DNA from: Trichosphaerium sp. ATCC 40318
Lineage: Eukaryota > Protista > Tubulinea
NCBI GenBank assembly: GCA_038496445.1
Contig: JALMLS010000155.1
Location: 124,001-188,000, forward strand
Direction of reading: 5' to 3'
Length of the DNA stretch: 64,000 nt
Shown here: one piece after another, positions 5,449 through 6,753 of the stretch
Numbering within the stretch: the first letter of the stretch is position 1
How the letters are laid out: the number at the start of each line of letters is the position of its first letter
Notes under the pieces: model-generated
Database searches by the model: none
What the model saw: the letters and a program-made list of their open reading frames with translations, nothing else
Told to the model about the DNA's origin: nothing
Made by a program: the position numbers and the translations under genes

Positions 5449-6753
5449 CTATTTTGCACTTTTTTCTTTCAACTCATTTATAGTTTCGTACTGCTCAGCT
5501 ACTTGATCTTGGAGATCCGTGCAATGTTGTTTGGTGAGCTTTAACTCAAGTTTCATACTGGCAAGCTCAGCTTGCATTGCTGCTTTGGTCTCTATTTCTG
5601 CCTGGTCGCAAGTTGCTTGTTTTATCAACTCTACATCTTCATTTGTTCTTAGCATGTGTCAGTACTAAACATAGAAACATCAAAGGCGTACATGTAGTCA
5701 CACATTGGTACAAGAACATATTTTATATTGTTGATCTTGTTTAGCTCATCTACCATTATTTCCACAACACCTACTATCAGTTAGAAAATTTAATACAATA
5801 GCCGTGCTACAAAAAGTCGTACTTTCTATACGAAGTTTGCAATCAATAGGAGCACCAATATCTTCCAAAAATTTTTCGCAGTCGCTTTTCAATTCCTTCC
5901 AACCCTTTGCCTTAGTACCAGTATGACAGTACTCATTCCGTTGAGCCATAATATGGTTAAATGTGTACCACGCCGATTGTGGGTTACGCATACTTTTTGC
6001 AAGTATGTACCAGTTCCGGGTTGGAGAGAACCGTTGATATGCGTTATCATAGAGCTGTAGCTCAAACCTCCACCGAGTAAGATCTGCACATTTAGGCACC
6101 GGCTCTTTACTCGTCCAATCGCGCTCAACTCTCAAATACATCATGTACAGAGACATAGCAATAACCCATCTGTACATCCGAAACCGAGCTGCGGAAAGAA
6201 CTGCAGGTTTTTCGTTCGTGCACGAACTTTCTCCAAAGCCCTCGGCACCCTCTTTTTGGTCTGGCACTATTCCTGACAAAGGACTACTTGTAGTGAGAAA
6301 AATAAGGCACAACGGCGTACAAGAAATAGAAAAGTTAAAAAAAACTCAAAAAACGTGTCTAACAAAATAAAAAAATGGTCTAACTTACGTTTTTTGTGCT
6401 GGTTTGTTGATACCACGGTTGCCGGTACGCTGCTTGCTAGTACTTGTAGTAGAGAATGGTCCTTTTTTTCTATAGAATATTGTGAGTAGACGGCCGAAAA
6501 TTGACTAGTTACGTACTGAATACGGCGGTTTCGATTAGCGTTACGGTCGATTCTAATAGGTCCACGTGATTTTTCAGGGTTCAAAGTGCTGTTATACCGT
6601 GCTTCTATCGGTGGCATAGCTACAGTATGTTAGGCAGAACCAAATAGTGTACTTACAATCTCCAGCTGAACCGCCAGACACTTTATTGTTCGCATCACCA
6701 TTCCTACTATTGGATGGGTGTCTATCAGCCTTGGGTGGGTGTCTATGAGCCAT
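5449..6753 (-). CDS. Candidate HEPN-domain ribonuclease with C-terminal coiled coil, intact copy 1, 5 exons
   Basis: Hand-spliced through four GT-AG introns with no stop. Helical core ...AWYTFNHIMAQRNEYCHTGTKAKGWKELKSDCEKFLEDIG, with R-N-x3-H at 5923-5940. Basic low-complexity N-terminus and coiled-coil last exon. Confidence 0.65.

What the first reader, a model, noticed from the sequence alone, without database searches (positions are those of the whole stretch)
5449..6753. Candidate lineage-specific HEPN ribonuclease (R-N-E-Y-C-H) with coiled-coil tail
Seen: an intact 5-exon gene whose helical core has DLTRW...AWYTFNHIMAQRNEYCH followed by an amphipathic helix (WKELKSDCEKFLEDIG). The highly diverged paralogue near 11000-11060 keeps AWxxFNxIM and R..EYCH, its best-conserved stretch. 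Known: R-x4-6-H, often RNxxxH, followed by a terminal helix is the catalytic signature of HEPN RNases (Swt1-like, DZIP3-like, RNase L/Ire1 KEN, bacterial toxins and abortive-infection proteins), which act as dimers. Inference: an undescribed protist RNA-cleaving effector for antiviral defence, programmed death or selfish toxicity, dimerised by its coiled coil.
Basis: partly seen in the sequence, partly recalled or inferred. Interest (0 to 1): 0.8.

Follow-up and report, generated by a model that had tools for sequence, protein, structure and literature searches.

The report
Orphan HEPN-like RNase gene family, amoeba
This is an intact protist gene from a small, fast-diverged family found only in this genome; its core looks like the RNA-cutting HEPN domain used in defence and RNA surveillance, with the catalytic Arg and His kept in every intact copy, but RNA cutting and expression are untested.

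Summary
The gene needs six exons between 5449 and 6753, not five. It probably starts further upstream, at 7004, with a conserved leader.

The core (window 5824-6201) belongs to a family of at least 12 intact and about 4 broken copies in this genome, 19-42% identical. D, W, A and the R and H of R-N-x-Y-x-H are invariant in the intact copies.

No curated model (Pfam, NCBIfam, PADLOC) matches. A profile search of 1.8 billion proteins found no relative.

Two confident AlphaFold models give a four-helix bundle. It has an insert after helix 2, and R..H sits at the end of helix 3, as defined for HEPN. An exhaustive fold search puts HEPN nucleases on top (AbiF, Swt1, Csm6, AF_0298), at modest Z of about 6; 14 and 18 of the top 50 are HEPN proteins. 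Profile-profile comparison with bacterial Swt1-type HEPN gives P = 1.2e-4, as strong as between accepted HEPN families.

Eight paralogues have a coiled-coil-like tail ORF downstream. The copy near 11000 is a pseudogene that lost the R.

Verdict: a new, lineage-restricted HEPN-like family, probably an RNase. Its activity, dimerisation, expression and role are inferred only. The scan's sibling note (s1-401164) covers the shared upstream DNA.

The parts
6990..7004 (-). Probable first coding mini-exon (ATG plus 4 codons), followed by a GTAAGT donor at 6989-6984
   Evidence: Conserved ATG plus 15 nt plus GT donor in all six upstream copies compared. No transcript evidence.
6657..6912 (-).
   Evidence: The frame is open and in phase with the ATG at 6753 in six copies. 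Indels come in multiples of 3, and third-codon-position changes are about twice those at positions 1 and 2. The acceptor TATTTAG|GGTCT is invariant.
6517..6619 (-). Coding exon (low-complexity, basic)
   Evidence: GT-AG ends and frame continuity. The C433 paralogue has a parallel exon with RGPLRTPRTN against RGPIRIDRN here.
6389..6469 (-). Coding exon (low-complexity, basic)
   Evidence: GT-AG ends and frame continuity.
5823..6286 (-). Main exon, encoding the whole HEPN-like domain
   Evidence: It matches paralogues on more than 10 contigs.
5824..6201 (-). HEPN-like domain, 126 aa: helix 1, helix 2 plus a beta-hairpin and short-helix insert, helix 3, helix 4
   Evidence: AlphaFold2 model with pLDDT 86 and pTM 0.82. 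Fold search puts HEPN nucleases on top. hhalign to HEPN_Swt1 gives P 1.2e-4.
5923..5940 (-). R-N-E-Y-C-H motif (R88 at 5940-5938, H93 at 5925-5923), at the C-terminal end of helix 3
   Evidence: R and H are invariant and N is present in 10 of 12 paralogues. Position taken from the model. HEPN definition from PMC3710099.
6082..6084 (-). Invariant Asp (D40) at the start of the second helix, a candidate for the HEPN 'upstream acidic residue'
   Evidence: Invariant in 12 paralogues. Aligned to the nearly invariant D of Swt1-type HEPN in one hhalign run. Its spatial position could not be checked.
5692..5773 (-). Small linker exon between domain and tail
   Evidence: Needed for the frame. Gapless similarity to the equivalent ORF of the C433 paralogue, 0 of 500 shuffles reach the score.
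5449..5647 (-). Last exon: 65-aa coiled-coil-like tail and TAG stop
   Evidence: Heptad periodicity, no Pro or Gly. Weak Pfam hits are to coiled-coil families only. Similar tail ORFs lie downstream of the domain in 8 paralogues. The tail aligns to the C433 tail.
6791..7148 (-). Conserved upstream block (promoter / 5' leader, overlapping the first two coding parts above)
   Evidence: 84-89% identical in just three places in the genome, while the gene body including introns is at 30-60%. It shares invariant motifs with the upstream block of the other subfamily.
10930..11345 (-). Pseudogene copy of the C433-type paralogue (domain exon)
   Evidence: Aligned to the intact C433 copy: a TGG to TAG stop, five frame-breaking indels, R to G and N to S in the motif.
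13326..13645 (-). Second copy of the conserved upstream block, belonging to the pseudogene locus
   Evidence: 89% identical to 6791-7109. Its leader frame is still open.

Best explanation
The gene encodes a protein of about 340-400 aa with four parts:
- a family-conserved N-terminal leader (a polybasic stretch followed by a Cys/hydrophobic stretch);
- a variable, basic, low-complexity region;
- a 120-aa four-helix domain that is a very divergent member of the HEPN superfamily, nearest the Abi2/Swt1 group;
- a C-terminal coiled coil.

Shown here:
- the domain's predicted fold;
- the R-N-x-Y-x-H motif at the end of helix 3;
- invariance of R and H in all intact paralogues, and their loss in two of four broken copies;
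- birth-and-death evolution of the family within one genome.

Inferred:
- Like other HEPN domains with an intact Rx4-6H motif, it is a metal-independent endoribonuclease. His would activate the 2'-OH, Arg and Asn would hold the phosphate, and the product would end in a 2',3'-cyclic phosphate.
- It works as a dimer with two motifs facing one cleft. The coiled coil would supply or regulate that dimerisation.
- The basic region and leader bind RNA or direct localisation.
- The set of diverged, co-regulated paralogues serves RNA-level defence or surveillance.
For: Family and motif:
- At least 12 intact copies at 19-42% identity have invariant D, W, A, R and H.
- Two of four broken copies changed R/N or H.

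Fold:
- Two AlphaFold2 models have pLDDT 86 and 90 and pTM 0.82. Both show helix 1, helix 2, an insert, helix 3 ending in R..H, and helix 4. That is the layout given for HEPN in PMC3710099.

Fold search against 48,161 chains:
- Model 1 top hits are AbiF (Z 6.3, 114 residues aligned), the Swt1 HEPN domain (6.1), Csm6 (6.0) and an entry titled 'Cas nuclease-crRNA complex' (5.9).
- Model 2 top hit is the HEPN protein AF_0298 (Z 6.2).
- About 14 and 18 of the 50 best rows are HEPN proteins: AbiA, LsoA, RnlA, sacsin, Roquin, MtlR, HI0074, HepS, Cas13 and others.
- The ESM Atlas shape search's best TM score by the query is to an Abi_2 cluster (0.45).
- The only named families in the language-model feature search are HEPN types.

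Profile-profile (hhalign):
- Against 29 cyanobacterial HEPN_Swt1 domains: probability 55%, P 1.2e-4, 56-68 columns. W, RN..H and helix 4 align in both runs; D40 aligns to the Swt1 D only in the local run.
- 14 reversed or shuffled controls gave P of 0.017 or worse.
- Accepted HEPN families scored P 2.2e-4 to 0.35 against each other by the same method.

Tail:
- Coiled-coil-like tail ORFs lie downstream of the domain in 8 paralogues.
Against: - No curated model matches any of the 12 members: Pfam E up to 10 (one faint RiboL-PSP hit at 0.23), NCBIfam, PADLOC, and PDB sequences.
- Foldseek against the PDB and against viral models finds nothing.
- Z of about 6 is within the range the tool itself calls common for helical bundles, and non-HEPN helical proteins such as She2p score as high.
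- hhalign probability is only 55%. It is 21% (P 0.001) for RiboL-PSP, and against Abi_2 and classical HEPN there is no signal (P 0.053 and 0.54).
- The conserved acidic residue is D-x2-[KR], not the usual E-x3-[KR]. Its closeness to R and H could not be measured.
- There is no evidence of expression (no RNA run listed), of dimerisation, or of RNase activity.
Confidence: 0.55

Rival explanations
1. The domain is a true HEPN-fold relative but does not cut RNA. It serves as an RNA- or protein-binding module, as proposed for the Swt1 HEPN dyad, Roquin and sacsin-like cases, with the coiled coil acting as a scaffold.
For: Several of the structural matches are non-catalytic HEPN domains (yeast Swt1 C-terminal domain, Roquin, MtlR). 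PMC3710099 describes inactive eukaryotic HEPN versions used as sensors.
Against: Inactive HEPN versions typically lose the Rx4-6H motif. Here R and H are invariant and N nearly so in all intact copies, and they decay in pseudogenes.
Confidence: 0.15
2. The domain is an unrelated (analogous) four-helix bundle. Its conserved R, H, D, W and several Cys serve another purpose, for example binding a metal, a ligand or a partner. On this view the likeness to HEPN is a common helical arrangement plus a short motif.
For: There is no match to any curated HEPN profile. Foldseek is blank. Z is about 6 with unrelated bundles close behind. Cys is frequent next to the motif (Y-C-H, C-G-L).
Against: HEPN proteins make up a third of the best 50 rows for two different family members. 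The motif sits exactly where HEPN has it. hhalign links the W, the motif and the last helix to Swt1-type HEPN, and in one run the D as well, at P 1.2e-4 against 0.017 or worse in controls. None of the Cys is invariant.
Confidence: 0.2
3. The locus is not a working gene: an unexpressed or decaying copy of a family that is being lost.
For: No RNA run could be listed. About a quarter of the family copies are broken, including one 5 kb away.
Against: The frame is open through six or seven exons with canonical splice sites. All family-invariant residues are kept. The leader, linker exon and tail are conserved against the C433 copy, although the introns are saturated.
Confidence: 0.08

Closest known systems
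Stand-alone, catalytically intact Swt1-family HEPN proteins of dictyostelids, Naegleria and Daphnia, and their bacterial Ava_2192-type relatives (Anantharaman et al. 2013, PMC3710099)
   Same: A solo HEPN domain with RN..H, lineage-specific expansion in a protist, and a predicted defensive endoRNase role. This is the best profile-profile partner (P 1.2e-4). The solved Swt1 HEPN domain is the second-best structural match.
   Different: It is not recognised by the Pfam HEPN_Swt1 model. It has a beta-hairpin insert, a conserved C-terminal coiled coil and a conserved N-terminal leader. No relative was found outside this genome.
Bacterial abortive-infection HEPN proteins Abi2/AbiD/AbiF (Pfam Abi_2; PbAbiF structure 8vz6)
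   Same: Best structural match of the window's own model (Z 6.3, 114 residues) and best Atlas cluster. They belong to the same Abi2/Swt1 group of HEPN and are dimeric RNases.
   Different: There is no profile-level similarity beyond the motif (P 0.053). Abi_2 domains are larger, are regulated by a non-coding RNA or an antitoxin, and are prokaryotic.
DZIP3/hRUL138-type HEPN proteins of animals (Pfam HEPN_DZIP3)
   Same: Eukaryotic and often expanded in immune-type gene families. The layout (conserved D-x-[ST] early, RN..H late, helix 4 ending in a small-residue motif) looks alike, and DZIP3 also carries a coiled coil. These likenesses are from my own knowledge and were not tested.
   Different: The Pfam model matches neither these proteins nor these loci. 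The weak DZIP3-like hits in this genome lie in other genes.
KEN domains of RNase L and Ire1
   Same: Metal-independent HEPN RNases that become active only on back-to-back dimerisation. This is the mechanistic model for a dimer-gated nuclease.
   Different: KEN domains did not appear among the structural or sequence matches. They are fused to kinase or pseudokinase domains that drive dimerisation; here a coiled coil would have to do so.

Membership tests
HEPN superfamily (as defined in PMC3710099; Pfam clan HEPN) | [quoted passage not shown] | tested here: met
   Two AlphaFold2 models (pLDDT 86 and 90) show helix 1, a short helix 2, a beta-hairpin plus short-helix insert, helix 3 and helix 4. 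HEPN chains head the exhaustive fold searches, though only at Z of about 6.
HEPN superfamily | [quoted passage not shown] | tested here: met
   R88-x4-H93 lies at the C-terminal end of helix 74-94 in model 1; R81 and H86 lie at the end of helix 67-85 in model 2. R and H are invariant in 12 paralogues. Definition.
HEPN superfamily | Polar residue (N, D or H) directly after the Arg | tested here: met
   N in 10 of 12 members; G or S in the two members of the most divergent branch.
HEPN superfamily | Second conserved acidic residue in helix 2, close to the motif (typically E-x3-[KR]) | tested here: inconclusive
   An invariant Asp (D40) starts the second helix in a D-x-[ST]-[KR]-W context. It aligned to the conserved D of Swt1-type HEPN in one hhalign run but not in the other.
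HEPN superfamily | Detectable sequence-profile relationship to accepted HEPN families | tested here: inconclusive
   hmmscan of 12 members finds no HEPN family, apart from RiboL-PSP at E 0.23 in one member. hhalign gives P 1.2e-4 (probability 55%) to HEPN_Swt1, 1e-3 to RiboL-PSP, 0.053 to Abi_2 and 0.54 to PF05168. Controls gave 0.017 or worse, and true HEPN families among themselves gave 2.2e-4 to 0.35.
HEPN superfamily | Metal-independent endoRNase activity dependent on R and H, usually as a dimer | not testable with these tools
   The homodimer prediction returned 'no answer'. No biochemical data exist.
HEPN_Swt1 (PF18731) | Match to the curated model above its cut-off | tested here: not met
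   No hit in 12 members at E up to 10. A genome-wide scan with the model hits other loci only.
HEPN_DZIP3 (PF18738) | Match to the curated model above its cut-off | tested here: not met
   No hit in 12 members. The genome-wide scan gives two weak hits in other genes.
Abi_2 (PF07751) | Match to the curated model, or profile-level similarity | tested here: not met
   No hmmscan hit, no genome hit, and hhalign P 0.053 restricted to the motif. Only the structural match is good.

The most novel reading that the evidence does not exclude
The family is a co-regulated battery of dimer-gated HEPN ribonucleases with a shared targeting leader. The strongly conserved promoter and leader module would switch on many diverged nuclease paralogues together, for example on giant-virus infection or other stress. 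That would make it a eukaryotic, abortive-infection-like RNA-degrading defence that arose within one amoeba lineage.
Probability: 0.15. Interest if true: 0.75.

Novelty: new variant of a known kind. Interest (0 to 1): 0.5.

Why it matters
HEPN nucleases are the effectors of Cas13, Csm6, many toxin-antitoxin and abortive-infection systems, RNase L and Ire1. Expansions of solo HEPN genes in protists have been predicted to be antiviral, but none has been tested.

This family adds a version that sequence databases cannot see, so similar orphan HEPN families may be common in under-sampled protists. It has two features that invite experiments:
- a conserved coiled-coil tail that could gate dimerisation;
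- a promoter and leader module kept at 78-94% identity (within each of its two types) between paralogues whose coding sequences and introns have diverged to saturation.

If the proteins prove to be active RNases induced by infection, they would give a tractable model of RNA-level innate immunity in amoebae, the natural hosts of giant viruses.

Tried and rejected
Searches that found nothing:
- Word-index protein search with the main exon: nothing.
- Profile search of 1.84 billion representatives: only two hits. Both are spurious sums of weak matches to repeats, in a CBM/Glug repeat protein and a TPR-CHAT protein, and neither covers the motif meaningfully.
- Metagenome contig scan: no relative.
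- Foldseek against the PDB and against viral models: no significant match.
- PDB sequence profile search, PADLOC and NCBIfam: nothing relevant.
- Pfam on the leader: nothing.
- Rfam over 4000-15000: nothing.

Tests that gave no usable answer:
- Homodimer prediction of the domain: 'no answer', score 0.00, partner fold uncertain. This is evidence neither for nor against binding.
- RNA evidence: no run was listed.
- BLASTP of the short exon peptides against the C433 paralogue gave no alignment. A local Smith-Waterman comparison with shuffles did.
Only about 1.5 kb on each side was compared.

Ideas considered and dropped:
- A tail-anchor or transmembrane exon after the coiled coil. The tail ORFs end in stops and the hydrophobic stretches lie in other frames of the 3' flank.
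- The conserved upstream block as a high-copy repeat or transposon. It occurs only next to family members, 3 copies of one type and 7 of the other.
- Positive selection as the cause of the contrast between conserved upstream and diverged gene body. The introns are saturated too.

Full report
**Observation.** The stretch 5449-6753 is coding on the minus strand. It has an ATG at 6753-6751 and a TAG at 5451-5449. A 464-nt exon (5823-6286) encodes the quoted DLTRW ... AWYTFNHIMAQRNEYCH ... WKELKSDCEKFLEDIG.

A continuous frame needs six exons with GT-AG introns of 37-102 nt, not five. I joined the exons only inside a local script to check the phase.

The small fifth exon and the tail exon align without gaps to the corresponding ORFs of the nearest intact paralogue on contig C433 (0 of 500 shuffles reach the scores). 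The first exons have parallel counterparts there as well.

No RNA run could be listed for the locus, so expression and splicing are unverified.

**A family, not a single gene.** Six-frame searches of the window's own 70-Mb assembly found 13 and then 17 matching places. At least 12 are intact and about 4 are broken, spread over more than 10 contigs.
- The intact domains are only 19-42% identical.
- Five columns are invariant: D40, W64, A77, R88 and H93. N89 is present in 10 of 12.
- Two of the four broken copies have lost motif residues. The window's own copy at 10930-11345 reads D-G-S-E-Y-C-H after a 1-base deletion, and the C458 copy has H replaced by Q.
- The window copy is a pseudogene of the C433 type, with a stop and five frame-breaking indels.

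**No relatives by sequence.**
- Pfam (E up to 10), NCBIfam, PADLOC and PDB sequences give no meaningful hit for any member.
- The word-index search found nothing.
- A profile search of 1.84 billion representative proteins returned only two repeat-driven artefacts.
- Metagenome contigs gave nothing.
- The library did not return the window's own protein either. This genome is apparently not in it, and close relatives of the organism may be missing too.

**Fold.** AlphaFold2 on the 12-sequence alignment gave confident models for the window's domain (pLDDT 86, pTM 0.82) and for the C24 paralogue (pLDDT 90).

Both show the same layout: a long helix 1, a short helix beginning at the invariant Asp, a beta-hairpin and short helix, a long helix 3 ending in R-N-x-x-x-H, a loop, and helix 4.

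The HEPN survey (PMC3710099) defines the domain in these terms: a four-helix bundle with frequent inserts between helices 2 and 3, Rx4-6H at the end of helix 3, a polar N/D/H after the R, and often an acidic residue in helix 2.

**Fold searches.**
- Foldseek found nothing.
- The exhaustive aligner ranked HEPN nucleases first. For the window model the top rows are AbiF (Z 6.3, 114 residues), the Swt1 HEPN domain (6.1), Csm6 (6.0) and an entry titled 'Cas nuclease-crRNA complex' (5.9). For the second model the top row is the HEPN protein AF_0298 (6.2).
- By my reading of the entry titles, about 14 and 18 of the 50 best rows are HEPN proteins: AbiA, LsoA, RnlA, sacsin, Roquin, MtlR/YggD, HI0074, TT1696, HepS, Cas13 and an AMPylated HEPN toxin.
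- The Z values are modest and the tool warns that such values are common for helical bundles. The weight lies in the enrichment, not in any single match.
- The Atlas shape search's best score by the query was to an Abi_2 cluster (TM 0.45).
- The only named families in the language-model feature search were HEPN types, at low scores.

**Profile-profile test.** I collected bona fide HEPN domains from bacterial genomes with the Pfam models and compared alignments with hhalign.

| Comparison with the family alignment | Result |
|---|---|
| 29 cyanobacterial HEPN_Swt1 domains | probability 55%, P 1.2e-4, 56-68 columns |
| RiboL-PSP | P 1e-3, motif only |
| Abi_2 | P 0.053 |
| Classical HEPN (PF05168) | P 0.54 |
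| 14 reversed or column-shuffled controls | P 0.017 or worse |
| Accepted HEPN families against each other | P 2.2e-4 to 0.35 |

In the Swt1 comparison the W, the RN..H motif and the last helix are in register; in the longer alignment the invariant D is as well. The link to the Swt1 group is therefore as strong as the links that hold the superfamily together, but it is not proof.

**Architecture.**
- Downstream of the domain, 8 paralogues have an ORF rich in E/K/Q/L.
- In the window gene this is a 65-aa last exon with clear heptad periodicity and no Pro or Gly.
- The region before the domain is basic (pI 11.7) and low in complexity.

**Upstream block and leader.** The gene bodies, introns included, are at 30-60%.
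- A second type of block marks the other subfamily: 7 copies, 78-94% identical, always next to a family member.
- The two types are homologous, with invariant motifs.
- From the invariant TATTTAG|GGTCT an open frame of 52-54 codons runs in phase into the former 'start' ATG in all six copies examined. Indels come in multiples of three, and there is an excess of third-position changes.
- A 5-codon ATG mini-exon with a GT donor lies about 80-100 nt upstream.
- The leader exon is found only at family loci.
- The gene therefore probably starts at 7004 and encodes about 399 aa, with a conserved leader (polybasic, then Cys/hydrophobic) of unknown role.

**Interpretation.** The best-supported reading is a new, lineage-restricted family of the HEPN superfamily, nearest the Abi2/Swt1 group, with an intact catalytic motif under constraint.

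By analogy with characterised HEPN enzymes it should be a metal-independent endoRNase that needs dimerisation. The coiled coil is the obvious candidate for that, but the dimer prediction gave no answer.

The pattern of old, diverged paralogues, recent duplicates and pseudogenes matches the lineage-specific expansions of solo Swt1-family HEPN genes already noted in dictyostelids, Naegleria and Daphnia and proposed to be defensive. The kind is therefore known; this version, its tail and its conserved leader and promoter are not.

That the organism is an amoeba comes from earlier notes of this scan, and I did not check it. Spliceosomal introns show it is a eukaryote.

Noticed in passing
window 6791-7148 and 13326-13645; L002 (C433) 461-950; L016, L017, L028 upstream parts: Every family locus carries a conserved upstream block (two homologous types; 78-94% identical within a type), although coding sequence and introns are saturated. 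Invariant motifs include AACGTGATTGATT, TATTTAGGGTCT, TCCARGCGT and CTTTTCAARA. Part of the block is probably a coding leader exon. The rest, conserved intron and promoter, points to shared regulation or gene conversion.
   Followed up: partly
G000:C185:55737-55889 (+), outside the window: A copy of the leader exon with an open frame of 126 aa, but no recognisable HEPN-like domain was found downstream on that strand. It may lead a too-diverged member or a different effector domain.
   Followed up: no
window 9537-10754 and 11861-12679; 11583-11824 and 13087-13333; inverted arms 10856-10902 / 12924-12970: The pseudogene locus is rearranged. A unit of about 1.2 kb and a unit of about 0.25 kb are each present twice (83-97% identical) around the broken domain exon, with a 47-nt inverted pair.
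   Followed up: partly
window 1948-2661 (-): An ORF with MORN repeats (Pfam MORN_2, E 1e-18), an ordinary neighbouring gene about 3 kb from the finding.
   Followed up: no
whole window: The palindrome CACGTG occurs 40 times, against about 8 expected from base composition. Several copies lie in the family's upstream blocks.
   Followed up: no
L033 (G000:C7:238799-238936), L031 (C100:79707-79859), L032 (C50:212140-212277): Other, unrelated HEPN-type motifs exist in this genome: a Swt1-like exon (RMRNDWAH) and two DZIP3-like exons (GRNKIAH, ARNQMAH). The genome holds several separate HEPN families.
   Followed up: no
tails of paralogues L006, L007, L010 (and L008): Three or four coiled-coil tails end in a similar acidic motif (E/D-E/D-S-E-S followed by Y, L or V) just before the stop. 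This is a possible short C-terminal signal.
   Followed up: no
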